From Chrysemys picta bellii (lineage: Eukaryota), in contig NC_088807.1 of assembly GCF_011386835.1 (NCBI RefSeq), positions 24,862,001-24,926,000 of the forward strand: 64,000 nt of DNA, given 5' to 3'. The stretch's first letter is position 1. Each line of letters opens with the position of its first letter. Below, piece by piece: positions 3,478 through 51,946 of this stretch. The notes under the pieces were generated by a model. That model did not search any database, was not told the origin of the DNA, and saw only the letters and a list, made by a program, of their open reading frames with translations. The translations under genes and the position numbers were made by a program.

Positions 3478-3549
3478 TTCCCACACAGGGAGTCGAACCG
3501 GGGCCGCCTGGGTGAACACCAGGAATCCTGAGCGCTAGGCCACGTGGGA
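3478..3549 (-). tRNA. tRNA-Glu(TTC)-derived gene, probably a decayed pseudogene
   Basis: The reverse complement TCCCACGTGGCCTAGCGCTCAGGATTCCTGGTGTTCACCCAGGCGGCCCCGGTTCGACTCCCTGTGTGGGAA (72 nt) differs at about 7 positions from vertebrate tRNA-Glu-TTC as recalled. The anticodon TTC and B-box GGTTCGACTCC are intact and a T4 Pol III terminator lies ~11 nt downstream. U33, G19 and the T-stem are mutated. Confidence 0.85.
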
Positions 3550-17608: not shown

Positions 17609-20600
17609 CTAGAGCCGCGTCCACTCAGCCGGGGGGTCGCGGGGGCCTTTTGGCTTCCCGATGCGGAAGTTATAGCCTGGGGGAGAGACAACAATGAGGG
17701 AGGGGCCTTTACCGCTCCAACCCCCGTCCAGACTCCCCAGATCCAAACGGCTGCTGGTTCCCCCCGCCCAGCCCAGGACTCCTGGGTCCCCTCCCCATGA
17801 CAGCCCTGGGCTCTCCCCCATCACCTCCTTCATATCCCCAATCAGAGCCGGGGCCTGCCCCACCCCCATCCTGGGGGCTGCCCCCCTACTGTACCCCTCT
17901 CACACCCACGTCCTACCAAGACCATTGCCCGGAGAGGTGAGTGGGCTGCAGCCCCTTCCAGGTGAGGCGTCCACGGGCTCGTAGCTGGACGTAGACTCAA
18001 GGCGGGGGGAGCTGGAGGCTGGCGGAAGAGAAAACAATGAGGCCTCCCTGGCTCCTGTTAGAGCCGCCGCTGAGATGCAGCCACCTCTGGGGTGGGGCAG
18101 CTGGGGAACAAGCACACACAAGGCCGCAGAGGGATGGCTCAGCCGGCACTGAGATGCAGCCACCTCTGGGGCGGGGCGGCTGGGGAACAAGCACACACAA
18201 GGCCGCAGAGGGATGGCTCTCCCAGCACTGAGATGCAGCCACCTCTGGGGCGGGGCGGCTGGGGAACAACCACACACAAGGCCGCAGAGGGACGGTTCAG
18301 CCGGCACTGAGATGCAGCCACCTCTGGGGCGGGGCGGCTGGGGAACGATTCAGCCGGCACTGAGATGCAGCCACCTCTGGGGCGGGGCGGCTGGGGAACA
18401 AGCACACACAAGGCCGCAGAGGGACGGTTCAGCCGGTGCTGAGATGCAGCCACCTCTGGGGCGGGGCGGCTGGGGAACGGCCATACAACACCGCACTGGG
18501 CTAGCTCAGCCAGCGCTGAGATGCAGCTGTGGCTGGGGAAAGCCATGGGTGCGAAGCTGTGATGAATGCCGCATGCACTCCCACTGCCAGGGTTTCCCAT
18601 CCAGGTACCGAACTAGCCTCCCCCTGTTTATCTGTGTAAGCCCCGGCCCTCCTCCACCCCCCCCACTCACCCTTCTTCTGGGGAGACGCCAGAAAACCCT
18701 GGAGATGAGATGGAGAAAAATGAATGACAGAAACTGACTCATGTCCTCGTCCCCAACCACCAGCCCCCACTCCCCTCCCAGAGCCGGGGAGAGAACCCAG
18801 GAGTCCGGGCTCCCAGCCCGCCCTGCTCTAACCCACCAGACCCCACTCCCCTCCCAGAGCTGGGGAGAGAACCCAGGAGTCCGGGCTCCCAGCCCGCCCT
18901 GCTCTAACCCACCAGACCCCACTCCCCTCCCAGAGCCGGGTAGAGAACCCAGGCCTCCTGAGTCCAAACCCTCCTCCCCGCCTGACCTACCGGCCTCGAG
19001 CCCCCCTCTGGCTGCGGCTGGCTGGGCAGGGGGTCAAGAACTCACCAGGGGTTTCACACTGGGCAGCACGGTCTTCCCATGGCTGGGGCAGGGCGAAGGG
19101 GGGCCCCGGGGGCTGGCGTCACCTGGAGTAGAGAGAGGGGCAGGGATCAGCGCATGGCCCCCCTGGGCAGCTGGGGGTCCCACCTCCCTAGGTCAGAGCC
19201 ACCCCAGGACTCTTGAGTCCGCGTCCCCCCCCTTCTGCATCAGAGCCATGGGCCTGGACTCCTGGGTCCCATCCCATTCCCCCCCCCCAGATCAGACCCA
19301 TGGTCCCTCCTGGCCCCAGACTCCTGGGTCCCCCCCCAGATCAGATACATGGTCCCGGACTCCTGGGTCCCCTTGCCGTACCTGCGCTGGTGGAGTTGGG
19401 GGTGTATTCGCAGCTGGGGCTGGGTGGCAGGCGTTTCACGGGGCTCCCGGGCAGGGAGTGGGCCTGCAGCCCCCCGAAGCCGCTGGGGTCGATGGGGGAC
19501 CACTCGGGGCTGCCCCCGCCAGGCCTGGTCTGCCGGGAGGAGGCCGCCGCCGGCCCGCCCCCCCGGCGGAACTTGTTCACCACCGCGTAGGTGTCACTCA
19601 TCTTAGGGGGCAGGTCCGGGGTGGGCTCGGACGGCACCGAGATGCTCCTGGGGGAGGAAGGGGGGTAGCACCAGTGGCGACGGACATGCTCCACCCAAGG
19701 CCGAGCCAGGGAGAGAAGTCCGGCTCCCTGCCTCCGCCCGTCCTGTAACCAGTAGCCCTGGGGGGGAGCAGATACTCAGCACAGTCTATTGGAGGGGGGG
19801 GCGGTTGGGGGGGTCAAAGCAGGGCATTGTGGGGAAGGGAGGGGGGTGCTCAGAGCTCCCTCCTGGGCTGCAGCTAACGCCCAATGGGGCGTTAACCCTG
19901 ACCCCTAATGACTACCCATTTCCAGGCTACATTGGCAGCTGCTGCAGTATTAAGGTACCGGCTGCCCCAGAGGTGGCTGCATCCCAGCCTTCCCCGGGGC
20001 GGCGTTACGTGCGGCTGCTCCCCCCACTGTCCCGCCCCAGAGGTGGCTGCATCTGGCCGCACACTCACCGTAAGACGCTGCTGTGTTTGCCAAGGGGCGC
20101 GGGGCGGCGCAGGGACACGGCGTCGTCGTACAGGGGCAGCTGGTTCTGCAGGGAGAGGAAGGGGTGAGCCGGGGAGGGGGGAGCTGGGGGAGCCGTCCCG
20201 GCCTGGTGCTGACACCGGCTTTTCGCTTCCTCCCGCAGGAAGTGTGACAACGGGCTGCGGGTGCAGGGCAGTTAACCCTGCTGGTGCCGGAGGGCCGGCC
20301 CTGGGGAAGGAACAGAGAGTGCCCCCCCTACAGCCTCCGCCTGGCCCCCCATCCCTCCACGCAGCTGCCCCTCCCCAGATGCACCCCTCTGGCCAGCCGG
20401 CCCCAGGGCAGGGACTGGCTGACTCAGGGGGGCGGGGAATGGGGCAGGGGCCTGTCCCCTCTAGGGGGCACCGGCTCCCATTGGCCCCAGGGCAGGGACT
20501 GGCTGACTCAGGGGGGCGGGGAATGGGGCAGGGGCCTGTCCCCTCTAGGGGGCACCGGCTCCCATTGGCCCCAGGGCAGGGACTGGCTGACTCAGGGGGG

Positions 20601-21622
20601 CGGGGAATGGGGCAGGGGCCTGTCCCCTCTAGGGGGCACCGGCTCCCATCCGGCCCCAGGGCAGGGACTGGCTGGCTTAGGGGGGCTGGGAATGGGGCAG
20701 GGGCCTGTCCCGGCTAGGGGGCGCCGGCTCCCATTGGCCCCAGGGCAGGGACTGGCTGGCTTAGGGGGGGCTGGGAATGGGGGCTGGGGCCTGTCCCCTC
20801 TATGGGGCGCCAGCTCCCATGCATTTTGTTACCAGCTCACCTATGAGCTAAACCTAAAGCCCTCTGGGCTTCTCCCCTATGGGGCCAGATGGGAGCCGGC
20901 GCCCCCAGTCCTTTCCTGCTCCACCTTTCAGCCCCATGGGGGGGGGGGAAAATGGGGAAGGGAGGGAAACTGAGTCCCCCCTTGCAAGTCCTGCCCCTCA
21001 CACCCCTCCTCTACTGCTCCAGCCCCCCCTCCATGCACCCAGGTCGCTTCCTTCTCAACTGCTCCAGCCTGCCCCCCAGCCCTCCCCCCACCAATTCCCC
21101 CCGTGTGCCCCTCCCCCAAGTGCACCCACTGATTCACACTCTTCCCCCCCCCCCCAGACCCTTCGGGCCCCCAGGATCCAGATCTCCCCCCCCCCCCCCG
21201 CCCCCGTACCGCACAGGCCAACGGAGCTGTTTACTCCAGGGCTGAATCGAAAGGGGAAGGAAGGCGCATGGGACTTCCTCAAGTGGGGGGAGGGGCTAAG
21301 GGGGGTGGACCTGGGGGGAAAATCGGGCTGGGGGGGGGAAATCAGAGATGCGGGGATCGGGGCTAGATCGCAGGGTGGGACCATAACCGGGTTAGGGTTA
21401 GTGTGTCTGTGCGCCCTCCCCCCCGGAGGGGCCGGGCCCTGCGCCCTGTGTGTCCCTTCGCCCCCTGCTGGAGGGGCCGGACCCTGCACCGTGTGGGTCC
21501 CTGCGCCCCCTGCTGGAGGAGACGGACCCTGCACCGTGTGGGTCCCTGTGCCCCCTGCTGGAGGGGCCGGACCCTGCACCGTGTGGGTCCCTGTGCCCCC
21601 TGCTGGAAGGGACAAGCCCTGC

Positions 21623-21677
<55 letters not shown>

Positions 21678-22008
21678 GCGCCCCCTGCTGGAGGAGACGG
21701 GCCCTGCGCCCTGTGTGTGTCCAGCGCCCCCTGCTGGAGGGGACAAGCCCTGCGCCCTGTGTGTCCCTTCGCCCTCTGCTGGAGGGGCCGGACCCTGCAC
21801 CCTGTGTGTCCCTTCGCCCTCTGCTGAAGGGGCCGGACCCTGCACCGTGTGGGTCCCTGTGCCAACTGCTGGAGGGGCCGGGTCCTGTGCTCTGTGTGTG
21901 TGTGTGTGTGTGTATGTGTGTGTGTGTCCCTGACGCCCCCTGCTGGAGGGGCCGGGCCCTGCACCGTGTGGGTCCCTGTGCCCCCTGCTGGAGGGGCCGG
22001 GTCCTGCG

Positions 22009-22046
<38 letters not shown>

Positions 22047-25000
22047 GGCGCCCCCCGCTGGAGGGGATGGGTCCTGCGCCGCGTGGGTCCCTGATCCAGG
22101 GCCCTCTCACCTCCTTGAGGTTCTCGTACTTGGCGGTGGCCAGGGCGGAGCGGAACATCTCGGCCACGGCGTGGAACAGGAACTCGTACTGCTCCTGCCA
22201 GACAGAGGGGACACGGCCGTGTTAGGGGAGTGGGGGCTCCCAGCGGCCCCAGCCCCACCTCTCCCAGCAGGGGGCGCGGTGTGGGCGTCCGGCAAGGGGA
22301 GAACCAGGGGGCTCACCAGCGTCTGGACGGCCGACGGTCTCTGCTTTCTCATCGCTAGGACGATGTCGAAAATGCTGAAATTCGGGGGGATGCTCTGAAA
22401 AACAGGAGAAGGCTCGCGAGTCCGGCAGGGGGCAGCCGCGGGTCGGACGCACGCCTACACACATGGACACGCGCGGTACCTGTTGGAGGAGGAGGTGTCT
22501 CACGTGCTCCAGGATGCAGATCACGCCAGTCCGGCCACAGCCAGCGCTGCCGGGGGGGGAGGAAGCAGGAAGGAAATGGGTGAAGAAGAATCCGCTACCA
22601 CCGCCTCAAATCAAATCCCTCTCGGGGGCAAAGGGGCCCTTCACCCCACACACTGCCTGTGGGCGTTCACTCTGAAACCTAACAACTACAGTTTCAACCT
22701 TCACGCATCTCTGGTGGGTGTTAACTCTGAGCCCTAATGAATGGAGCGATGATGCGGAACCTCTGGGGTACGTTCACTCTGAACCCTAATGGCTACGGCT
22801 ACAACCTTCGTGCATCGCCAGTGCACGTTCACTCTGAAACCTAATGACCATCTGTGGTAGGCGTTTACTCTGAACTCTGACGGACGGTTAAATGGGGCAT
22901 CCTGGGTGTCGACAGTGGGATGTTTACCCCAAACCGTAAGGCCTGGGTGAACAACGGGGTGTCATCACACTGGGTATTTGCCCTGGACTTTAATGATGGG
23001 TTTCAGCAGACATCATCCACCCAGATGGCTGGATTGTTCACTCTGAAGCCTAATGACTGGCGTTTCACTAAGGTCATGGTTTGTCTCAGCATGGCTATTA
23101 GCGGTGAACCCCAATAATTATGTTTTTAAAAGGGGCTATAGCTCATCTCAACAAGGCCGTTAACTCTGAAGCCTAATGATTGTCTTTCAAATGGGGACAT
23201 AGGTCATTTCAGTATGACCATGACTTCTGAAATATAACAACTGGGATTGAAATAGGGACACCTTGACATGGCCGTTCACGCTGGATCCTAAAACTTGAGG
23301 TTTAAATGCGGGTGTGGCGTGTCGAACCGCGACTGTTAACTCGGAACCCTAATGTTTGGTGTTAAATGGGGACTTGATTTGTTTTGACATCGGTGTTAAC
23401 TCTGGATGCTAATGATCGTTGTTTGAGTGGGACTCTGCCCATCTCTGTGCGTTTACTCTGAACCCTACCGCTGGCCATTCAACGACTGCTCTGCGCCACT
23501 TCTGAGGTTGCAGAAAAGGGGCGGAGCTCACGGCAGGGGGAGGCAGTCAGAGGATGGGGTTTGGATTGTGGGAGGGGTTTATTTGAGGGCGTGGCTTAAT
23601 TTTTTCTAGCAGACCCCTGGGTATGAAGACTGCGTTCTCTCTCCATCCCGGGTGAGGGGCTAATGAGGCCCCACTGGGCCCTCCCTCCACTCATCCGCTG
23701 CTGAGCTCTCCACCCCCCCCACAGCACAGCACAGTGCCCCCTACCTGCAGTGCACGCAGATGGGGGCTGAGTCGTCCCCCTGTTTCAATCGCACGTGGTC
23801 GATCATCTCCAGGAAATGGCTGTAATTGTCGGGGATCCCGCGGTCCGGCCAGGCCACGTACTGGAAATGGGTGAGGGGCCGCTCCTCCTGGGGAGGGAAC
23901 GGCTGGCATCAGCCCTGTTCCCCATGGCACGGCACCCCCAGCACCTGGTCCTGCCGGGGGAGAGCACCCCCTGCCCAGCTCCCGGCCCTGCTCCCCACAG
24001 CACAGCACCCCCCCAGTGCCCACCTCTGCCGGGGGAGAGCGCCCCCTGCCCAGCCCCCGGCCCTGCTCCCCACAGCACAGCGCCCCCCAGAGCCCACCTC
24101 TGCCAGGGGAGAGTGCCCCCTGCCCAGCCCCCGGCCCTGCTCCCCACAGCACAGCACCCCCCAGTGCCAGCCCTGCCGGGGGAGAGTGCCCCCTGCCCAG
24201 CTCCCCGCCCTGCTCCCCACAGCACAGCATCCCCCAGTGCCAGCCCTGCCGGGGGAGAGCGCCCCCTGCCCAGCCCCCGGCCCTGCTCCCCACAGCACAG
24301 CACCCCCCAGTGCCAGCCCTGCCGGGGGAGAGCGCTCCCTGCCCAGCTCCCCGCCCTGCTCCCCACGGCACAGCACCCCCCAGTGCCCACCTCTGCCAGG
24401 GGAGAGCGCCCCCTGCCCAGCCCCCCGCCCTGCTCCCCACAGCACAGCACCCCCCAGTGCCAGCCCTGCCGGGGGAGAGCGCCCCCTGCCCAGCCCCTGG
24501 CCCTGCTCCCCACAGCACAGCACCCCCCAGTGCCCGCCCTGCCAGGGGAGAACGCCCCCTGCCCAGCCCCTGGCCCTGCTCCCCACAGCACAGCGTCTCC
24601 CAGTGCCCACCTCTGCCGGGGGAGAGCGCCCCCTGCCCAGCCCCCCACCCTGCTCCCCACAGCACAGCACCCCCCAGTGCCAGCCCTGCCGGGGGAGAGC
24701 GCCCCCTGCCCAGCCCCCGGCCCTGCTCCCCACAGCACAGCACCCCCCAGTGCCAGCCCTACCGGGGGAGAGCGCCCCCTGCCCAGCCCCTGGCCCTGCT
24801 CCCCACAGCACAGCACCCCCCAGTGCCCACCTCTGCCAGGGGAGAGCGCCCCCTGCCCAGCTCCCGGCCCTGCTCCCCACAGCACAGCACCCCCCAGTGC
24901 CCACCTCTGCCGGGGGAGAGCGCCCCCTGCCCAGCCCCTGGCCCTGCTCCCCACAGCACAGCACCCCCCAGTGCCAGCCCTGCCGGGGGAGAGCACCCCC

Positions 25001-28000
25001 TGCCCAGCCCCTGGCCCTGCTCCCCACAGCACAGCACCCCCCAGTGCCCGCCCTGCCGGGGGAGAACGCCCCCTGCCCAGCCCCCCACCCCGCCGCATGG
25101 TGCCCCCGCAGCTCACTGACGTTCTGGAAGCCGACGCTCAGCGTGCGGATGATCACGTCCGGATTCAGCTCCTGCTCCTGGATCTGAGAGACAGAGACAA
25201 GCTGCTGCAGACAGAGGCTTCGGGGGTGCCGACATTGCAGGGTTATGAAGCGCCTTTAGTGTCTCCAAGAGAGGCACCGCTGCAGCCACCTCTGGGTGAG
25301 GTGAGGAACAGCTGAGGAATAGCTGCATATAACGCTGCACAGGGACGGATCAGCTGGAGCGGAGATGCAACCACCTCTGGGGCAGGATGGAGTTGCCCAG
25401 CAGCAGTTTGGGACAGGAAGTGAAGGGGAGCTGTGTCTCTCTCCTGGCGAGTCCCCCAGGCTGCCCCTGTAACCCCTCCCTGGTACCTGGACGATGGAGA
25501 AGGGCCCGATCTGCAGTGGTTCTTGCTTCAGCGGCCAGTAGCGTTCACACTTTTTCTAAGGAGGGAAAGTCAGTTCACGGAGAGTCCATGGGGGTCGCCC
25601 CCCAGACTCCCCCCACAGCCAGGGGATGGGGGTGGGCACGGATGGGCCCCCACACTCACCTTCCCCATCTCCACCTCCCGACAGGCCATGGCAATTACCT
25701 GGAAGGAAGGAAGGGAACGAAACAGTTAGGAAAAGAATGAGAGAAGGAGCATGTACCTGGCCGGGCTGGAATAGAGAACCCAGGCGTCCTGGTTCCCAGC
25801 ACCCACCCCCCAACCCAATAGACCCCACTCCCCTCCCAGAGCTGGGGAGAGAACCCAGGAGTCCTGGCTCCCAGCCACCCCTGCTCTAACCCACCAGACC
25901 CCACTCCCCTCCCCACTCCCCTCCTAGAGCCAGGGAGAGAACCCAGGAGTCCTGGCTCCCCTTGACAACCCCCCCCCCCCCACACACACCCTGTTCTTTG
26001 CAAACAGCTCTCACATGAGCCCTGACAGACTCACTCCACCCAGCCCACGTCCTGCAGGGTAGTTACCCCCAAAGGGTAACATGGGGGGGGGGCGTTTCAA
26101 AAAGCCCAGAACTCCTCAAAATTCATCCCCACGGCAAGCAGGAGGAACGGATTTAGCTGGGAGCCCGGCTCTCTGGCCTGGGGGTAGCCGTTCATCCCCA
26201 GAAGACACCGGATCTTGGTCCGTTTGAATCGGCAGCAGGACCCAGGGGAGTTAAATTTCTGACCTTTTCCCGGCCTGTTCTGCTCCCAGGCTGCAGTTAT
26301 GCAAAGGGGTATCCGGGAGTGGGACGGCTCGTCCGGCGCTGAGATGCAGCCACCTCTGGGGTGGGGCGGCTGGGGAACAGCCGCACATAACACCACACAG
26401 GGATGGCTCACCTGGCACTGAGATGCAGCCACCTCTGGGACAGTGCCGCTGGGGACCAGCCGTGCAGCGCTAGCAGAATGGGATTGTTTTCATTTTGTAA
26501 GCTCAAAAGCTCGTCTCTCTCCCCAGCAGAAGTTGGGCCAATAAAAGCTCGTCTCGCTCGTGCCAGGGAAGGAAATTTATCAACGAGCCAGAGCCGGGAG
26601 ATGCTCGGATAGTCTTGGGCGACACATCGGCGAGGAAGAGGGACAGTTTCTGTGACTGTCCTGGGAGAAGGAGAGGGAAGATAACGTTGTAGGAGCGTGT
26701 GATGATCGAGCTTCAGCTCCGTGCCTGGCGTTCAGGCCCCGGCTCATGAAAGGGCGGCGCGGAATTCTGCCGTGAAAAGCCTCGCACGTCCGCCTCAACA
26801 CGGTCTCGACGCCTCGGATGGAACAAAAAGATGAGGCCATCCGGATTCCACACCCAGGAGGCCTACGCATAGCGCCAAGCTTCCTAAAAGTGAGAGTGGC
26901 ATTTTAGGGAGAGGAACGAGCGCGGGCAGTTACTGGTGAAAGTGATGCATAAAGCCACTCGTCACATGAGGCCGCCCCGCAGGCCACGTGGCAAGCGTTA
27001 TCCCCGCAGCTTCTGAGCCGTGCCAAGCGCCGCAAAGCGAAGCCCTTGGATTTTGCAAAAGCCGCGGGAGATTACGGCAAACCTAGCGTCTGTCCTGTCG
27101 CCAGCAAGTTTCCGGGAGCAGATGGCATCCACGCGGGCAGCTGTCCCGGTCCTGGCACGGGTCCTACACTTCGCCAGCGCTCAACGGGATGGAATTTGGG
27201 GCCTAGAGACCATCAGAAGAACACGTCCTGGTCTTTCACCGATGTGACCATGCAAATTCTGCCCAGTGGGGATCTCTGCACTTAGCAGAAAGGAACCAGC
27301 TCCGACTTGAAGGATTCGATCAGGTCGAGCCCTGCAAATCCACAAATATCCACATCTGCGGATGTGGATATCTGCACAAATTGTATATCCGGGCAGGGCT
27401 GTACGGCTCCGGAGCGCTCCCAAGCGTGGCGAGGAAAGCAAAGGAATTGTAGGTCTGCCAGGAACTGGCAGCGCTCAGCAGACAGGCTCTCTCCTGTAAT
27501 CTACGTGCCCAAACCAGAAAATCGTTCAGCCTTGGGCTTGGTCCCCAAACGGCTTGCAACCACGGAGCCCCTGCAGCCTTGGGCTTGGTCCCCAAACGGC
27601 TTGCAACCACGGAGCCCCACCGGCGGGAAAGCAGCGCCGCCCCGTGGCTGAAAACGAAGCGGTTCGCGACACTTCCGAGTATTCGCGACATAGGATTTGG
27701 CTGCGCCGACCCGTCCGTTCAGGAAATGCTGCTGAATGCAGAAAGATTTGGCCAGGAGCCACTGAATATCTTTGTGCGGGGAACGGCTGGTGACGGCGCC
27801 CGCACCAAATTCTGCGACCCACCGGAAAAGACGAAGGGCAGGACCCTAGGACATTAGATCGGTCCAGCTCCGTCGCCAGGTTCTGCACAAGGAACGACGC
27901 GACAGACGCGCTCTGAAGCCAATCGGGAAAATCATCGGGGACAGACCTGTTCCACTCCTTGGCCCATCCTGGAAATACACCTAATCCTGTGTGCTGCTTC

Positions 28001-31000
28001 TCCGCCCAACGCCAAGCCCACGCTCCGTGACACGCAGACCCGGGGCCTCGAAGAAGCCAGCTGCGGACACACGTGAGATGCGAGCGGACCCCGCAGAAGT
28101 AGGCTGAGAAGCTGCGATACGGTTTCCTGTATTGGTGGGCACAGCAAGAAATCCGCTTGGAGAACGTCCCCGGAGAAACGTGAGTGGCTAATGAAACTTG
28201 CAGAAGGACGATCTACGGAGGGAAACCGGCCTCTCCATAGGAAAGGTCGCCGGCACCGATCCCACGCTCCCCGCAGGCTGGACCACACGCAACGGAGAAC
28301 CGGCACCCACGCGAGTGTCCCTGGAGCCGATCCCCGGCGGTGGTGTGGAAATTGCAAACTGTGGATCCGTCCAGAGGGGCAAATCACAACGCCGGAGGTG
28401 TGGAAAGGGCACGTTGGCACACACCACAGCCTGAAACTGCAAGGGGTACCCTGGCACATGTAGGAACTGTTAAATTACGCCTGTCTGAACCACGTGCGGG
28501 GATGTATCGTGTTTGTAGGGGAATAAACGGTACAATTACGCCTGTCTACATAAGAACATAAGAACGGCCGTACCGGGTCAGACCAAAGGTCCATCTAGCC
28601 CAGTATCCCGTCTACCGACAGTGGCCAATGCCAGGTGCCCCAGAGGGAGTGAACCTAACAGGCAATGATCAAGTGATCTCTCTCCTGCCGTCCATCTCCA
28701 TCCTCTAACAGACAGAGGCTAGGGACACCATTCCTTACCCGTCCTGGCTAATAGCCATTAATGGACTTAACCACCATGAATTTATCCAGTTCTCTTTTAA
28801 ACCCTGTTATAGTCCTAGCCTTCACAACCTCCTCAGGCAAGGAGTTCCACAGGTTAACTGGGCGCTGTGTGAAGAAGAATGTCCTTGTATTTGTTTTAAA
28901 CCTGCTGCCTATTAATTTCATTTGGTGACCCCTAGTTCTTGTATTATGGGAATAGGTAAATAACTTTTCCTTATCCACTTTCTCCACATCACTCATGATT
29001 TTATAGACCTCTAACATATCTCCCCCTAGTCTCCTCTTTTCCAAACTGAAGAGTCCTAGCCTCTTTAATCTCTCCTCATATGGGACCCTCTCCAAACCCC
29101 TAACCATTTTAGTTGACCTTTTCTGAACCTTTTCCCGTGCCAGTATATCTTTTTTTAGATGAGGAGACCACATCTGTACGCAGTATTCGAGATGTGGGCG
29201 TACCATCGATTTATATAAGGGCAATAAGATATTCTCCGTCTTATTCTCTATCCCCTTTTTAATGATTCCTAACATCCTGCTTGGTTTTTTGACCGCCTCT
29301 GCACACTGCGTGGACATCTTCAGAGAACGATCCACAATGACTCCAAGATCTTTTTCCTGACTTGTTGTAGCTAAATTAGCCCCCATCATATTGTATGTAG
29401 AGTTGGGGTTATTTTTACATTTATTACTTTACATTTATTCACATTAAATTTGCCATTTTGTTGCCCAATCACTTAGTTTTGTGAGATCTTTTTGAAGTTC
29501 TTCACAGTCTGCTTTGGTCTTAACTATCTTGAGCAGTTAATCATCTGCAAACTTTGCCACCTCACTGTTTACCCCTTTCTCCAGATCATTTATAAATAAG
29601 TTTAATAGGATCAGTCCGAGCACTGACCCTTGGGGAACACCACTAGTTACTCCTCTCCATTCTGAGAATTTACCATTAATTCCTACCCTTTGTTTCCTGT
29701 CTTTTAACCAGTTCTCAATCCATGAAAGGACCTTCCCTTTTATCCCTTGACAACTTAATTTACGTAAGAGCCTTTGGTGAGGGACCTTGTCAAAGGCTTT
29801 CTGGAAATCTAAGTACACTATGTCCACTGGATCCCCTTGTCCACATGTTTGTTGACCCCTTCAAAGAATTCTAATAGATTAGTAAGACACGATTTCCCTT
29901 TACAGAAACCATGTTGACTATTGCTCAACAGTTTATGAGTTTCTATGTGTCGGACAATTTTATTCTTAACTATTGTTTCGACTGATTTGCCCAGTACAGA
30001 CGTTAGACTTACCGGTCTGTAATTGCCGGGATCACCTCTAAAGCCCTTTTTAAATATCGGCGTTACATTAGCTAACTTCCAGTCATTGGATACAGAAGCC
30101 GATTTAAAGGACAGGTTACAAACCCTAGATAATAGTTCCGCAATTTCACATTTGAGTTTTTTCAGAACTCTTGGGTGAATGCCATCTGGTCCCAGTGACT
30201 TGTTAATGTTACGTTTATCAATTAATTCCAAAACCTCCTCTCGTGACACTTCAATCCGTGACAGTTCCTCAGATTTGTCACCTACAAAAGCCGGCTCAGG
30301 TTTGGGAATCTCCCTCACATCCTCAGCCGCGAAGACTGAAGCAAAGAATCCATTTAGTTTCTCCGCAATGACTAATCTTTAAGCGCTCCTTTTGTATCTC
30401 GATCATCCAGGGGCCCCACTGGTTGTTTAGCAGCTTCCTGCTTCTGATGTACTTAAAAAACCTTTTGTTATTATCTTTGGAGTTTTTGGCTCGCCGTTCT
30501 TCAAACGCCTCTTTGGCTTTTCTTATTACATTCTTGCACTTAATTTGGCAGCGTTTATGCTCCTTTCTATTTGCCTCACTAGGATTTGACGTCCACTTTT
30601 TAAAGGAAGTCTTTTTATCTCCCACTGCTTCTTTTACATGGTGGTTAAGCCACGGTGGCTCTTTTTTAGTTCTTTTACTGTGTTTCTTAATTTGGGGTCT
30701 ACATTGAAGTTGGGCCTCTATTATGGTGTCCTTAAAAAGCGCCCATGCAGCTCGCAGGGATTTCACTTTAGTCACTGTACCTTTTAACTTCTGTTTAACT
30801 AACCCCCTCAGTTTTGCATAGTTCCCCCTTTTGAAATTCAATGCCGCAGTGTTGGGCTGTTGAGATGTTCTTCCCACCACAGGGATGTTAAGTGTTATTA
30901 TATTATGGTCACTATTTCCAAGCGGTCCTGTTAGAGTTACCTCTTGGACCAGCTCCTGCGCTCCACTCAGGACTAAATCTAGAGTTGCCTCTCCCCTTGT

Positions 31001-37000: not shown

Positions 37001-40000
37001 CCCAGCCCGGAGGTAGCTGGGATTTGGTTTGGGCTACGTTTATATATCAGCAGCTGAAGCCAGGCGAGAGACAAGGGAACAAAGTCCCTTCTGGAAAATT
37101 CATTTCCCTGGCAGAGGGGAGGACGGGCCAGCGCGGAGCTGCACAGAATTAACCCTCCCCACCCGACTCACTCCCAGCACAACTCTGGAAAGCCACCGGG
37201 GAAACTGAGGCACCACGTTGAGGCAGGGCCTGGCCAAGGTGACACTGACAGAACCCAGGAGTCCTAGCTCCCAGCCGCACCCTGATCTAATCCGCTACAC
37301 CCCACACCCCTCCCAGAGCTGAGGAGGGAACCCAGGAGTCCTGGTTCTTAGTTCTAGCCTATAAAAAGAACCTTCTGCTGTTTTATACTGTGACAACCAG
37401 TGAACTTTGCTGCTCCCCAGAAATAGCTGCATCTCAGCTGTTCCCCAGCTCCCCATCCCCAGAGGTGGCTGCATCTCAGCGCCAGGCAAGCCATCCCCAT
37501 CTGGCATTATGCGTAGCTGCTCCCTGGGTGCCCTGTCCCAGAGCTGGCTGCATCTCAGCACTGGGCGAGCCATCCCACTATGGTGTGATGTGCAGTTGTT
37601 CCCCAGCTGCCCCGCCCCAGAGGTGGCTGCATTTCAGCATTGAGAGCAAGCAGTGTGGTTTGTAACTGCAGGAGGCAGCCGCTGTTTTAGGAGGGGCTAT
37701 TTCATGCACTATCGATGCTATGTCACAAGCCACAGTGATAAGGGGAAATTTGCATTTGGTGCCTGCTCAACACAGGGTCTATTTGAACCAGCACCAGGAC
37801 CCAGTGGAGGTGAATTTCGGATTATGTCACGGCCTTTTCTGCTCCCAGGCTGCGGTTATGCAAAGGAGTAGCTGGGAGTGCGACTGGGACGGCTCGCCCG
37901 GCGCTGAGCTGCAGCCACCTCTGGGGATGGGGAGCTGGGGAACAGCCGCACATAACGCCACACAGGGACGGCTCGCCCAGCGCTGAGATGCAGACACCTC
38001 TGGGGATGGGGAGCTGGGGAACAGCCGCACATAACGCCTCACAGGGACGGCTCGCCCAGTGCTGAGATGCAGACACCTCTGGGGATGGGGAGCTGGGGAA
38101 CAGCCGCAGACTGTTATCAGAAGGGACTGTCCTTACTGAATCCCCCACTTCCCTTCTCTTGTGGGTTCTCTCCCCGGCTCTGGGAGGAGAGTGGGTCTAG
38201 TGGTTAGAAGAGGGCATGGGGCTGGGAGCCAGGACTCCTGGGTTCTCTCCCTGGCTCTAGGAGGAGAAGGGAGGGTCTAGTGGTTAGTGCGGGGGGGGTG
38301 GAGGGAGAAGTGAAAAAGAAGGGGAAAGTGGATGCCATGTTTGGGTTCCCAGTCAATTTCACTTGAGTTTAATGACCCGATTGCTAGTAACACAAACCAG
38401 AGAATATTCTTTACTCTGGGAATTTCCTTCAGACTGAATCGATCGCTCAGACCGAACGGCTGATTTCCACTGGATTCCCAGCTCTTGACCGGTCTAGATG
38501 CAGCGGTACCTTGCCCAGGACTGAGGTGCAGCCACTTCTGGGGCGAGGCAGCCGGGGAGAGCCGCACTGTGACACTAGAAATGTGTGCCGGAAGAAACAA
38601 TGGGGAATGTAGTGGTCGGAAAGCATCTGTCTGCTGGGGTTCGGCGGGGTAACCCCAAGATGGAAGGGAAATGTAATGACCCTAGGGCGCACCCCACTAA
38701 CGATTTCAGGCCAGCACTGACTGCCAGGGGAGAGCACCCCCTGCCCCACTCCCCACAGCACGGTGCCCCCCAGGACCTGGCCCTGGCTGCCAGGGGATAG
38801 TGCCCCCTGGCCAGGCCCCCGCCCCGTGCCCAGCCCTGGCTGCCAGGAGGATCTGCTGAATGTTGTAGCGATGCCCAGGGCCCACAAAGCTGGTGGCGGT
38901 GCGGGAAGCCTGTGGGCAAAGCCGGAGCGGCTATTGGCTGGATTTCACCATTTCTCGGCTCTGCCTTGCCCCGGGCCCGAAAACTTGCACTGCTCCGGGC
39001 AGTGATGGGCGACAGAGCCGGCCACCCGCCAAGGGACCCGGAACCGAGACGTCCAATAGCGTCTCATAGGATCAGCCCAGGGCACCCAGCCCCACAATCC
39101 CTGGCTCTAACCACTAGCCCCTGCTCCCCTCCCAGAGCTGGGGAACGAACCCAGGAGTCCTGGCTCCCAGCCCCCCCTGCTCTAACCACTAGACCCCACT
39201 CCTCTCCTAGGGCCGGGGAGAGGACCCAGGCGTCCGGGCTCCCAGCCCCCCTGCTCTAACCACTAGACCCCACTCCCCTCCCAGAGCTGGGGAGAGAACC
39301 CAGGAGTCCTGGCTCCTAGCCCCCCCTGCTCTAACCACTAGACCCCACTCCCCTCCCAGGGCCGGGGAGAGGACCCAGGCGTCCTGGCTCCTAGCCCCCC
39401 CTGCTCTAACCACTAGACCCCACTCCCCTCCCAGGGCCGGGGAGAGGACCCAGGCATCCAGGCTCCCAGCCCCCCTGTTCTAACCACTAGACCCCACTCC
39501 CCTCCCAGGGCCGGGGAGAGGACCCAGGCGTCCGGGCTCCCTGCAGCTCTGACTCTTGCTGGCCGGCAGGTGACGAGTTAACTCTGTGCACGGCGGGAGC
39601 AATGGAAAGTTAAACCCAAGCCCCAGATTAATGATTACAGAAAGAAACTTGCACTGGGGCTGGAGACGGGCGGAGGGTGTCGGACGCCTGGGTTCCCTGC
39701 GCAGCTCCGGGAGGGCAGTGTGGGGTCCCGTGCGTTAGAGCGAGGTGCCGGGGCTGGGAGCCAGGACTCCTGGGTTCTCTCCTCGGCTCTGGGAGGGGAC
39801 CGGGGTCTAGTGGTGCAGGGAGCCAGGACTCCTGGGTTCTCTCCCTGGCTTTGGGAGTGGAGTGGGGGCTGGTGGGTTAGAGCGGGGGGCTGGGAGCCCG
39901 GACTCCTGGGTTCTCTCCCTGCTGGGGGTGGGATTTCCCGGGGATCCGGGCGGCGCAGGGGCTGGCGCGGGGTCTCGGCTCTCCCCGCGGCCCGGCCTCA

Positions 40001-49300: not shown

Positions 49301-51946
49301 CTGGGATGTGCCAGCTGGACAGACAGCCTCCCGAACAGACAGCTGCCCTCCCTCTCCCCCCGCGGCTCCGGGACGAATTAAGCCAGCCTTATGCAATCCC
49401 GGCTTTAAATAGGGCACGTCATGTGCTTCCCAACAAGGCGGTGTGTGTGTGAGACTGGCTGCTTGTGGGGATCACGGGGGCGGAGGTGGCCCAGGGCATG
49501 CTGGGAATTCAGGGGCCTCGGCAGTGCCATCACGTGGCGGAATGCGGGTAGCTCAGTGCCAGGGGAGGGGAGCTCTGACATCATGAACCTCCCAGTGCCC
49601 CCGAAAAAGAATGGGTGACACCGTCCGTGTGTTATAAATGGGGAAACCGAGGCACATTCTTCTGTTTCAAAACAGCAGGGATAGAACCCAGGAGTCCTGG
49701 TTCCCAGCCCCTGTATTCTACACTACTAGACCCCTCTGCTGGGGGGCAGGGGGGATTGCAGCTGAGAGCTCGTGCCAGGGTGGGACGGGTCAGTGTAGGA
49801 CACTTAACGAACCGCTTTACCCCACACAACCATTCTTCCTGTCAGCTGGACTTGGCATGGAATCGGGGTCTCTGAACTGCTTGTTCACAGCCTGAAACAG
49901 ATGTGATTGGCTCACGATACACCTCGTTAGTCAGGGCAAGTGTTTCTCCCCCACATCAGAATGGGGGTCCGTCTGTCCGGGTAGCTCCTCCCCGTCCTGG
50001 ATCAGAATGGGGGTCCTCCTTTCCCTGGTACCCCGTCCCCGTCCCGGATGAGAACAATGGGCTCCTCTACCCTGATGTGAGGGGACCGGCTAGCTGTATA
50101 CCAAATACTGCAATAGGATCGGGATCTCTCATCCTCCCTGCCTTGTAGTGCCAGAACAAAGGCCTGTCACGTGAACCACCCAGGGGTCAAAGCCAACTGT
50201 GGGCTTCTACAGGTCCCTCGTGTTAGCTGGTGGGACTCCCTGCCACAGGATACTGGCGCTGACAGCCCTGCAGGCCCCAGGAGTATCTGGAAGATCTCAA
50301 ACCAAAGGCAGGGTTTTGGCAGGGCGGGCCCGACCCCGGAGGGAGCTGGATTTCGGCAGTGAGACAGCGCTAATCACTGGGGGCTGGGAAGCTCTTTCCT
50401 CTGGGGTTCCTCTGCTAGCCAGGATGCCGCGCTAGATGGGCTCGTGCTCCAGCTGTTCCTTGGTTTCCTTCTAGTTCAGCGTTCTCCCTGCCCTCCTGGT
50501 TCTGCGGGGTGCGGGGTCAAGACACTGGTAGCCGCAGGGAGCGGGTGGTGCCTGGTCTCTGTGTCTAATCCCCCCTCCTCTGGCGTCTCTCGCCCCTGCA
50601 GCCCAGAGCTGGAGGGGCCGTATTGCAGCGAGGAGGAGCAACACCGGCTCTTTGACCTCTACCATTACCTGCACAGCCGCATCCACAGCACCTCTCGCCC
50701 CCTGCGCCTCATCTACCATGTGGCCGAGAAGGAGACGCTACTCGCCTGGGTAAGGCAGGGCACAGATCAAGGCATCTGGAGGGGCAGGGTCATGGGCCCT
50801 CATCTCCCCAGAGGAGCAGCAGGGCTCCTCTTCCTCCCCAAGAGAGGCAGGAGCACCCCCTACTACTCACTCACCGCAATTGGCTCAGGCTCTCTGCAAA
50901 CTCAGGCAGCATCACTCACACGTGGGTCAATTTCCCCCAAGTTGGAGTGATGGGCTCAGGCCTTCTGCAGACTCAGGCAGTGTCGCTGCCTTTGCGACAC
51001 TTGGTTTATGATTTCAAGGTTTTCTTCCCAACTAGGAGGGTGAGATGCTTACTCTATTCGTAACAGAAAGCTGAGCTGCTGCTGTGATCACATGACTCTA
51101 GCAATCGCCCTTAGGCATGAGCCTAGATTGCCTGGGCCTTCACCTGGTGTTGGCTGGGGGCTTGGGAGAGACCACTTCCTGTCTCAGTAATACTCTAGGG
51201 TGAGGAGGGTGGGACTTCCTGCTGTGTCCTTTCTATCTTGCACTTGGCTCATTCCTGCTCTCCTAGCAGGAAGCACAGTGGTGCCTGGCGTGGGAAGTGA
51301 TCACCAAGCCCAGACCAGTCCCGCCTGGATAGCTGGGGAAATGGTTCAGGCTGTTCGTTTCCAGAATTCCAGCGTCAAGGCCCCACATGCTGCAGAATTC
51401 CCAGACTACTGAGGGATGTGACTGGGATATGCACCTTAGTGTGATGTGTCCACTCACGTGATCGGCAGCGATGTGCTTGGGTTTTAACCAAACATCAGTA
51501 GGTTTCAGAGTGAACACGCGCCCCATTGGAACAGATAGCTCATGCTGCTTCTGGCTGTCATGCTGACAGCTCCATATAGGTTTAAAGCTTGTGCTGCCTC
51601 CCTCAGGGCTAATGATGAGAGGAAGCTTGGGGAGCAAGTTTGGAGAGGGAGGACAAGAGACAAGACAGTGCCAAGTATTGGGGAGAGGATGGATTGACCT
51701 GTCCTTTTTCCACGTTCTCCTTCTCAGGTCACCAGTAAGTTCGAGCTATACACCTGCTTCAGCCCCCTGGTAACCAAGGCCGGCGCCATCAATGTCCTCA
51801 CCAAGTTGTTGCGCTGGATCAAGAAGGAGGAGGACCGGCTCTTCATTCGCTACCCCCCAAAGTACTCTACTACACCCAACCCTGGGAAGGGCGCCAAGGG
51901 GGGCCGGCCCGATGGCGCGGAGAACGGATTTTTTGCTGGCCTCTAA
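45532..51946 (+). CDS. MON1B: Vacuolar fusion protein MON1 homolog B (Rab7 GEF subunit); coding exons 45532-45616, 46363-46785, 47987-48785, 50602-50749, 51728-51946 (557 aa)
   Basis: [55 protein letters not shown] and [20 protein letters not shown]. The C-terminus [10 protein letters not shown]...NGFFAGL* is the MON1B type. The gene is next to a SYCE1L-like gene as in human. Confidence 0.95.

What the first reader, a model, noticed from the sequence alone, without database searches (positions are those of the whole stretch)
22665..23470. CRISPR-like architecture in a vertebrate intron: 15 conserved palindromic cores separated by diverged ~35-40 bp spacers
Seen: a much lower-GC island in which the 21-mer GTT(C/A/T)ACTCTGAA(A/C/G)CCTAATGA recurs at spacings of 55, 52, 55, 36, 59, 54, 60, 61, 62, 60, 55, 61, 60 and 56 bp. 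The intervening DNA has diverged almost beyond recognition, with only traces such as AAATGGGGAC and CAACCTTC..GCATC. The core contains the inverted repeat GTTCA-ctc-TGAAC and often a telomere-like CCCTAA. Neighbouring minisatellites diverge evenly, so selective retention of one sub-motif suggests constraint. Known: a 5-3-5 palindrome is the geometry of steroid-receptor response elements (ERE GGTCAnnnTGACC). Inference: a phased homotypic binding-site array acting as an enhancer or protein-loading platform, or the subterminal binding array of an ancient transposon. It is not a true CRISPR, since there are no cas genes and the spacers are distantly related to each other.
Basis: partly seen in the sequence, partly recalled or inferred. 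Interest (0 to 1): 0.7.

Follow-up and report, generated by a model that had tools for sequence, protein, structure and literature searches.

The report
Decaying motif-core minisatellite in phosphatase intron
An intron of a turtle tyrosine-phosphatase gene is mostly an old 15-unit tandem repeat whose conserved core is a free-standing ~26-base DNA word also found as single copies in turtle and bird DNA, but the array's cores are no longer protected from mutation, so it looks like a worn-out cluster of protein-docking sites and has nothing to do with CRISPR.

Summary
The 21-base core is kept far better than the spacers.

The array fills about 70% of a 1.2-kb intron that splits the catalytic VHCS|AGCGRTG motif of a PTPN18-like phosphatase gene on the minus strand.

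- **The spacers are related.** They are weakly but significantly homologous (z=6.4), so this is a tandem duplication. It is not a CRISPR-like array of unrelated spacers.
- **The core stands alone.** It is a ~26-bp motif, yGTTmACTCTGAAvCCTAATGA+TGRC. It occurs as solo copies with unrelated flanks twice more in this window, in related turtles, and at 13 distinct loci of bird-type host DNA. It has no hits in 596 Gb of prokaryotic genomes.
- **No constraint now.** Against four other turtles (0.7-0.9% divergence) there are 9 substitutions in cores and 6 in spacers. Eight of the nine move away from the consensus.
- **The palindrome is rare.** The full 5-3-5 palindrome occurs in only 1 of 15 units and 1 of 13 solos, so the steroid-receptor reading is not supported.
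- **No transposon signs.** There are no terminal repeats, target-site duplications or paralogous arrays.

Best reading: a relic cluster of sites for an unidentified long-motif DNA-binding protein, now decaying. Earlier notes of this scan report CTCF- and REST-motif minisatellites elsewhere in this genome. None is known to carry this motif.

The parts
22547..23744 (-). Intron of a tyrosine-phosphatase (PTPN18-like) gene. It is phase 2 and splits the catalytic motif VHC-S|AGCGRTG.
   Evidence: The exon translations end in ...APICVHC and start with [15 protein letters not shown]. Pfam Y_phosphatase matches the upstream exon at E=2.6e-11. GT and AG are read from the sequence.
23745..23905 (-). Upstream exon (part) encoding the WPD loop through VHC.
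22478..22546 (-). Downstream exon encoding (S)[22 protein letters not shown].
22665..23506 (+). Tandem array of 15 units (52-62 bp, one of 36 bp). Each unit is a 21-bp core plus a spacer. It lies antisense to the host gene.
22665..22685 (+). core u01, 2 mismatches to GTTMACTCTGAAVCCTAATGA
   Evidence: Two substituted sites between turtles, 22665 and 22684.
22720..22740 (+). core u02, 1 mismatch
22772..22792 (+). core u03, 1 mismatch. This is the only unit with the full 5-3-5 palindrome.
22827..22847 (+). core u04, 0 mismatches. It is followed by the short 15-nt spacer.
22863..22883 (+). core u05, degenerate (5 mismatches). Organism E has a 7-bp deletion inside it.
22922..22942 (+). core u06, degenerate (7 mismatches)
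22976..22996 (+). core u07, degenerate (7 mismatches)
23036..23056 (+). core u08, 0 mismatches
23097..23117 (+). core u09, degenerate (6 mismatches)
23159..23179 (+). core u10, 0 mismatches
23219..23240 (+). core u11, most degenerate. It has 13 mismatches in register, and about 8 by my hand count (not a tool result) if shifted by one base.
23274..23294 (+). core u12, degenerate (6 mismatches)
23335..23355 (+). core u13, 2 mismatches
23395..23415 (+). core u14, 3 mismatches
23451..23471 (+). core u15, 4 mismatches
19891..19911 (+). Solo copy of the motif in the neighbouring intron, 2 mismatches to the degenerate 21-mer.
51495..51515 (-). Solo copy of the motif 28 kb away on the other strand, 1 mismatch.

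Best explanation
This is an old, now static minisatellite. One copy of a free-standing ~26-bp DNA motif (yGTTmACTCTGAAvCCTAATGA followed by TGRC in birds and yTGG in the turtle array), together with about 35 bp of its flank, was duplicated head to tail until it filled most of a phosphatase-gene intron.

The motif is most likely the recognition sequence of a long-motif DNA-binding protein, such as a multi-zinc-finger or multi-homeodomain factor, shared by turtles and birds. That would explain two things:
- Isolated copies with unrelated flanks exist in both lineages.
- Inside the array, the motif survived while the spacers drifted almost to randomness.

The array therefore once worked like a homotypic cluster of docking sites.

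**Shown:** the anatomy, the tandem origin, the dispersed solo copies, the position-specific degeneracy, and the absence of present-day constraint.

**Inferred:** that a protein reads the motif, and that past selection or protection by binding kept the cores. Today the array is a relic. Six cores are already dead, and the rest take substitutions at least as fast as the spacers.
For: **Tandem origin.** All 15 units are recovered by one profile. The spacers are homologous as a set (z=6.4). A 107-bp dimer is repeated at 77% identity.

**Core far better kept than spacers.**

**The motif is a unit of its own.**
- There are 2 solos in this window.
- Short 33-37-bp paralogous pieces, with unlike flanks, occur in three related turtle genomes.
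- There are 17 metagenome contigs, about 13 distinct loci, with the exact 21-mer.
- Information in those loci drops to zero beyond positions -1 and +25.
- The contigs carry avian-type CR1 tails and share nothing else with the window.
- There are 0 hits in 596 Gb of prokaryotic genomes and in the viral set.

**Binding-site-like degeneracy.** Positions 4 and 13 vary freely, and all six combinations occur in 13 loci. The same two positions vary in the turtle array.

**Relic status.**
- 9 substitutions in cores and 6 in spacers between turtles.
- Eight of the nine core changes move away from the consensus (my reading).
- A 7-bp deletion lies inside core u05 in organism E.
- Core decay is over-dispersed.
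Against: - No protein is identified, and no motif database was available.
- If selection kept the cores for a long time, its absence over the last ~1% of divergence needs an extra assumption, such as loss of function or redundancy among many sites.
- Six of the nine core substitutions are CpG-type. Counting non-CpG changes only gives 3 against 3, which cannot exclude a two-fold slower core.
- The bird copies were found by an exact-match search, so their perfection is partly ascertainment.
- The solo copies show no consistent CpG-island or promoter context.
Confidence: 0.45

Rival explanations
1. A neutral minisatellite in which only the cores are homogenised. Short-tract gene conversion or template switching between units can start only where the units still match, which is the core. 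The cores therefore keep resetting each other while the spacers drift. No protein binding or selection is involved.
For: - Between species, cores change as fast as spacers, as expected under concerted evolution.
- Well-kept cores are interleaved with dead ones.
- Spacers carry more CpG (25 in 527 bp against 6 in 315 bp) and show a CpA/TpG excess, so they started with a faster clock.
Against: - It does not explain why the same 19 fixed and 2 free positions recur as solo copies with unrelated flanks in birds and turtles.
- No conversion or unit-number change is seen among five turtles.
- A 21-26-bp homology tract is short for conversion (from general knowledge).
Confidence: 0.2
2. A fragment of a transposon or other mobile element that carried an array of recognition sites for its own enzyme. 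The cores would have been kept by selection on the element before it landed in the intron, and the block has decayed neutrally since.
For: - It is an AT-richer block inside very GC-rich DNA.
- Present decay is neutral.
- Spacer heterogeneity looks older than the locus could produce at the observed rate of 0.7-0.9% between species.
Against: - No long paralogue of the array exists at >=80% identity in three turtle genomes.
- There is no inverted partner array. The only flanking inverted repeat is 17 nt at 82%, no better than seven others in the same 1.2 kb.
- Solos have neither shared internal flanks, nor target-site duplications, nor inverted partners in 12 of 13 loci.
- No transposase lies nearby.
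Confidence: 0.15
3. A currently functional enhancer or protein-loading platform under purifying selection. This is the reader's main inference, and it includes the steroid-receptor-type 5-3-5 reading.
For: - Spacing is regular at 52-62 bp, and nine cores are still good.
- The array and its unit number are retained in five turtles.
- Other motif-core arrays are reported in this genome (unchecked).
Against: - A core rate at or below half the spacer rate is rejected (p=0.002). A rate at or below one fifth is rejected at 5e-6.
- Eight of nine core changes destroy consensus positions (my reading).
- The full palindrome is present in 1/15 units and 1/13 solos, with no compensating changes.
Confidence: 0.08

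Closest known systems
Minisatellites whose unit carries a long zinc-finger motif. Examples are CTCF-site tandem arrays such as DXZ4/FIRRE-type repeats, and the REST/RE1 and CTCF arrays noted elsewhere in this turtle genome by this scan.
   Same: The unit is about 50-60 bp and holds one ~20-26-bp high-information motif. The same motif also exists as many single sites with unrelated flanks. The motif is better kept than the rest of the unit.
   Different: The factor is unknown here. Between-species data show no constraint on the cores. The DXZ4/FIRRE comparison rests on my general knowledge, and the turtle CTCF/REST arrays are unchecked notes.
The gypsy insulator of Drosophila: 12 Su(Hw) sites in ~350 bp with AT-rich variable spacers, while endogenous Su(Hw) sites are mostly single.
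   Same: It is a phased homotypic array of a long multi-finger motif with variable spacers, and solo sites are dispersed in the genome.
   Different: That array sits inside a known retrotransposon and is multicopy. This one is single-locus with no element around it. The comparison is from general knowledge and was not tested.
Ordinary old intronic minisatellite (VNTR).
   Same: The units are head to tail, homologous over their whole length and intronic. Neighbouring introns hold younger 45-, 73- and 84-bp arrays.
   Different: Decay is very uneven along the unit, and the core is shared with dispersed solo copies in two sauropsid lineages.
CRISPR array
   Same: Only the look of conserved repeats alternating with variable spacers of similar length.
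   Different: This is a vertebrate intron. The spacers are homologous to each other. The repeats are degenerate. There are no cas genes and no prokaryotic context.

Membership tests
CRISPR array | Spacers unrelated to one another (acquired sequences) | tested here: not met
   The spacers are homologous as a set (z=6.4). The proximal 18 nt give z=9.7.
CRISPR array | Prokaryotic or viral genome context with cas genes nearby | tested here: not met
   The array lies in an intron between two Y_phosphatase exons of a vertebrate gene. The core has 0 matches in 596 Gb of prokaryotic genomes and in the viral collection.
Minisatellite (tandem repeat, unit 10-100 bp) | Head-to-tail units derived from one ancestral unit | tested here: met
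   There are 15 units with a 52-62-bp period. All are found by one profile. Cores and spacers are both homologous.
Minisatellite (tandem repeat, unit 10-100 bp) | Copy-number variation between individuals or species | tested here: not met
   Orthologous contigs of three other turtles span the array with no unit gain or loss. The only change is a 7-bp deletion. The array is old and static.
Steroid/nuclear-receptor IR3 response element | Two inverted half-sites separated by 3 bp, conserved as a palindrome | tested here: not met
   All five arm pairs are complementary in 1/15 units and 1/13 bird solos. Variable positions 4 and 13 lie in the arms and have invariant partners, so nothing compensates.
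Transposon subterminal or internal binding-site array | Terminal inverted repeats, target-site duplication and an inverted partner array | tested here: not met
   Only chance-level inverted repeats flank the array. There is no target-site-duplication signal at the solos (1.54 vs 1.66 null). Twelve of 13 solos have no inverted partner within the fetched contig.
Transposon subterminal or internal binding-site array | Other genomic copies carrying the same array | tested here: not met
   At >=80% likeness only 33-37-bp pieces from elsewhere in three turtle genomes lie on the array. Dfam/Repbase was not available.
Homotypic transcription-factor binding-site cluster | The motif exists independently of the array, with position-specific degeneracy | tested here: met
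   Solos with unrelated flanks occur in turtle and bird DNA. Positions 4 and 13 are free and the other 19 are fixed.
Homotypic transcription-factor binding-site cluster | Purifying selection on the sites between species | tested here: not met
   There are 9 substitutions in 315 bp of cores and 6 in 527 bp of spacers.
Homotypic transcription-factor binding-site cluster | A known factor that binds the motif, and occupancy in vivo | not testable with these tools
   No motif database or ChIP/ATAC data were on hand. Literature string searches found only chance primer matches.
Known structured RNA family | Match to an Rfam covariance model | tested here: not met
   Nothing relevant appears at E<=1 in window 19000-26000 or in the 13 bird loci. 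One tRNA-Gly lies 165 bp from one solo only.

The most novel reading that the evidence does not exclude
The ~26-bp word yGTTmACTCTGAAvCCTAATGA-TGRC is the recognition site of an unassigned multi-finger or multi-homeodomain DNA-binding protein. That protein would have been conserved since before turtles and birds split. Its sites would number in the hundreds to thousands, comparable in information content with REST or CTCF sites. Tandem arrays such as this one would be, or would have been, loading platforms for it.
Probability: 0.3. Interest if true: 0.65.

Novelty: new member of a known kind. Interest (0 to 1): 0.4.

Why it matters
The array itself is a decaying repeat of little consequence for the phosphatase gene. 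The useful by-product is the motif. It is a sharply bounded, high-information 26-bp word shared by turtle and bird genomes, with unrelated flanks and two freely varying positions. Few vertebrate DNA-binding proteins have sites this long (REST, CTCF and ZNF143 are examples). A new one conserved across sauropsids would be a concrete, testable lead. The case also shows that a strong core/spacer contrast inside an array does not by itself prove present-day function.

Tried and rejected
- **TRF.** It misses the array because the copies are too diverged.
- **Rfam.** Nothing turned up on the window region or on the 13 bird loci. I considered hammerhead, snoRNA D'/C' box, U5, RNase MRP and telomerase-template resemblances from memory. 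I dropped them because Rfam is blank and the flanks lack the other required boxes.
- **tRNA linkage.** Only 1 of 13 loci has a tRNA nearby.
- **MITE or terminal-repeat reading.** Only L008 has an inverted partner.
- **Helitron 3' end.** Conservation continues past the would-be CTAA|T terminus.
- **Truncated LINE or SINE tail.** Both boundaries are sharp and no graded upstream homology exists.
- **Target-site duplications.** None above chance.
- **Transposase next to solos.** The long frames in L016 and L017 are GC-rich low-complexity artefacts.
- **CpG-island context of solos.** Inconsistent.
- **CpG decay as the sole cause of spacer divergence.** The signature is ordinary and cannot randomise whole spacers.
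- **Literature string searches.** Only chance primer hits.
- **Prokaryotic and viral collections.** 0 hits.
- **Earlier scan notes by sequence.** Blank.
- **Transcription-factor guesses from memory.** HNF1/HMBOX1 'AGTTAAC', SIX 'GAAACCTGA', PAX and a homeodomain TAATGA site could not be tested and are not claimed.
Full report
**1. The observation**

Reading the window shows an AT-richer block (GC 0.44-0.53) inside DNA of 0.65-0.78 GC. A fuzzy search for the core places copies at 22665, 22720, 22772, 22827, 22863, 22922, 22976, 23036, 23097, 23159, 23274, 23335, 23395 and 23451. A very degenerate fifteenth copy lies at about 23219.

The degenerate 21-mer GTTHACTCTGAAVCCTAATGA with up to three mismatches has 11 matches in the 64-kb window, against 0.01 expected from dinucleotide shuffles. 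A profile HMM of the unit recovers all 15 units at E<1e-3. Tandem Repeats Finder does not report the array, although it reports the younger 84-, 45- and 73-bp minisatellites in the neighbouring introns at 77-94% matches.

**2. Where it lies**

The two flanking exons lie on the minus strand. They translate to ...[40 protein letters not shown] and [22 protein letters not shown]. The first matches Pfam Y_phosphatase at E=2.6e-11.

The intron (22547-23744, phase 2) therefore splits the catalytic VHCS|AGCGRTG signature of a tyrosine phosphatase. Another first-stage note calls the gene PTPN18. I confirmed the domain but not the paralogue. The array occupies about 70% of this 1.2-kb intron and is antisense to the gene.

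**3. Is the core really kept better than the spacers?**

Yes.
- In a gapped alignment of the units, the core columns have an 80-90% majority base, while the distal spacer is near the random floor.
- Among units with well-kept cores, core identity is 76-95%, while spacer identity is indistinguishable from shuffled spacers for most pairs. Only u01-u03 and u10-u13 reach z of 2.5-3.
- If the spacers had the core's rate, the observed spacer identities would have probabilities down to 4e-12.

The spacers are not unrelated, however. As a set they are significantly homologous (alignment identity 0.339 against 0.238 ± 0.016 for shuffles, z=6.4). The 18 nt after the core give z=9.7. A 107-bp dimer is repeated at 77% identity. 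So the array arose by tandem duplication of one unit. That alone removes the CRISPR analogy.

Core decay is also uneven between units. Eight cores have 0-3 mismatches, u15 has 4, and the other six have 5-13 (dispersion p=2e-7).

**4.

Twenty public runs hold this intron. They come from the source organism, a near-identical one, and four others holding fewer of its sampled words, 0.65-0.67 for C, D and E and 0.26 at most for F.

I laid contigs of four of them on the intron at 80% likeness. The orthologous array is present with the same 15 units in three species and partly in a fourth. It is 0.7-0.9% diverged, with no unit gained or lost. The one structural change is a 7-bp deletion inside the already degenerate core u05.

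- Within 22665-23506 there are 15 substituted sites: 9 fall in the 315 bp of cores and 6 in the 527 bp of spacers.
- There is no depletion (P of so few = 0.98).
- A core rate at or below half the spacer rate is rejected at p=0.002. A rate at or below one fifth is rejected at 5e-6.
- Restricting to the nine best cores gives 6 substitutions in 189 bp against 9 in 653 bp.
- By my reading, eight of the nine core changes move away from the consensus.
- Six of the nine core changes are CpG-type once the state in the other species is considered. Counting only non-CpG changes gives 3 against 3, which still shows no depletion but has little power.

**5. What the core is**

Two further copies lie outside the array, at 19891 (+) and 51495 (-). 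In the related turtles, a few contigs from elsewhere in the genome match only 33-37 bp centred on a core, and their flanks are unlike the array.

An exact search of public metagenome contigs found 17 contigs from three datasets, representing about 13 distinct loci after removing duplicates.
- These contigs are CpG-depleted and lack bacterial-type ORFs.
- They carry CR1 LINE fragments whose 3' tails are, from my knowledge, of the avian type.
- They share nothing with the turtle window except the motif itself and a MIR-type SINE core.
- The same pattern has no match in 596 Gb of prokaryotic genomes or in the viral collection.

Aligned on the motif, the 13 loci have no information in their flanks beyond position -1 (T or C) and +1 to +4 (TGRC). 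So the dispersed unit is a sharply bounded word of about 26 bp and not a long repeat.
- Positions 4 (A/C) and 13 (A/C/G) vary freely. All six combinations occur among the 13 loci, and the same two positions are the variable ones in the turtle array.
- The solos have no target-site duplications and no inverted partner in 12 of 13 loci.
- They have no Rfam match or consistent tRNA neighbour, no adjacent mobile-element gene, and no consistent CpG-island context.

The complete 5-3-5 palindrome is present in one array unit and one bird locus. The two variable positions lie in its arms with invariant partners. The nuclear-receptor geometry is therefore not a conserved feature.

**6. Interpretation**

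A sharply bounded, high-information word that occurs singly with unrelated flanks in two sauropsid lineages, with the same fixed and free positions, is what the site of a long-motif DNA-binding protein looks like. REST and CTCF sites are the models, from general knowledge.

The array is then a tandem duplication of one such site plus its flank. The motif part outlasted the spacers because it was read by a protein, through selection or through protection by binding.

The between-species data show that this no longer holds in these turtles. The cores are decaying at least as fast as the spacers, and six are already dead.

At 0.7-0.9% divergence between species, in-situ point substitution cannot have brought the spacers to near-randomness quickly. 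So the array must be very old, or it passed through a more turbulent early phase. This is inference.

I put 0.45 on this 'relic site cluster' reading. The rivals are:
- Core-limited homogenisation in a neutral minisatellite (0.2). It fits the neutral between-species rates but not the dispersed solos.
- A block from a mobile element that carried its own recognition-site array (0.15). It fits the foreign base composition, but there are no paralogous arrays, terminal repeats or duplications.
- A currently selected enhancer or platform (0.08). The substitution counts contradict it.

CpG decay of the spacers (25 CpG in 527 bp against 6 in 315 bp; CpA o/e 1.69) contributes to the contrast but cannot produce it alone.

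**7. Relation to earlier notes of this scan**

Unchecked notes say the genome is a turtle (painted turtle). They report minisatellites built on CTCF and REST motifs, and a 'conserved-box, variable-spacer' array in SMG9 explained by CpG-free boxes, in other windows.

These raised my prior for the motif-core reading and prompted the CpG check. None is known to carry this motif. The look-up by sequence was blank.

**8. Limits**

- No transposon library (Dfam/Repbase), no transcription-factor motif library and no whole genome were available.
- The bird copies were found by exact match, so their perfection is partly ascertainment. The conservation of positions 1-21 cannot be measured from them.
- The host of the metagenome contigs is inferred from CR1 features, not named.
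- The between-species comparison covers only about 1% of divergence.

Noticed in passing
window 23531-23707: Nine substitutions in about 180 bp (roughly 5%) separate the source organism from the other turtles, eight from all four and the ninth (23707) from the three that cover it. The array next to it differs by only 0.7-0.9%. This could be a lineage-specific conversion tract, an old haplotype, or a local mutation hot spot just right of the array.
   Followed up: no
window 20399-20820, 21425-22093, 23912-25090: The neighbouring introns of the same gene hold much younger GC-rich minisatellites: 84 bp x5 at 94% matches, 45/119 bp with (TG)n at 77-89%, and 73 bp x16 at 91%. The gene is unusually rich in intronic tandem repeats.
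   Followed up: partly
window 37193-37213 and L012:3214-3234: An exact 21-mer, CCACCGGGGAAACTGAGGCAC, is shared between the turtle window and a bird contig. From general knowledge it is the conserved core of the ancient MIR/CORE-SINE family, so it is ordinary.
   Followed up: partly
L008:888-910 and 1263-1285: This is the only bird contig with two motif copies. They are in inverted orientation 375 bp apart, with the GTT ends facing inward. The left copy has lost its TAATGA end.
   Followed up: partly
L015:1832-1902: A tRNA-Gly(GCC) gene lies 165 bp downstream of the motif copy in this bird contig. No other locus shows such a neighbour.
   Followed up: yes
window 19880-19890 and 51516-51530: Both solo copies in the window are preceded by the same CCAATGGGGCG, at 0 and 3 nt upstream. 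The bird solos lack this. Inside the array, AAATGGGGAC lies about 20 nt upstream of the next core. The turtle solos may be collapsed or seeded units related to the array.
   Followed up: partly
window 3478-3549 (-) and 28784-28999: There is a tRNA-Glu(TTC) gene, and a CR1-like ORF2 C-terminal fragment 43% identical to the bird CR1 peptide.
   Followed up: no
L017:1213-4736: The bird contig carries a long proline/histidine/serine-like stop-free frame. It is a GC-rich minisatellite translated and not a gene.
   Followed up: partly
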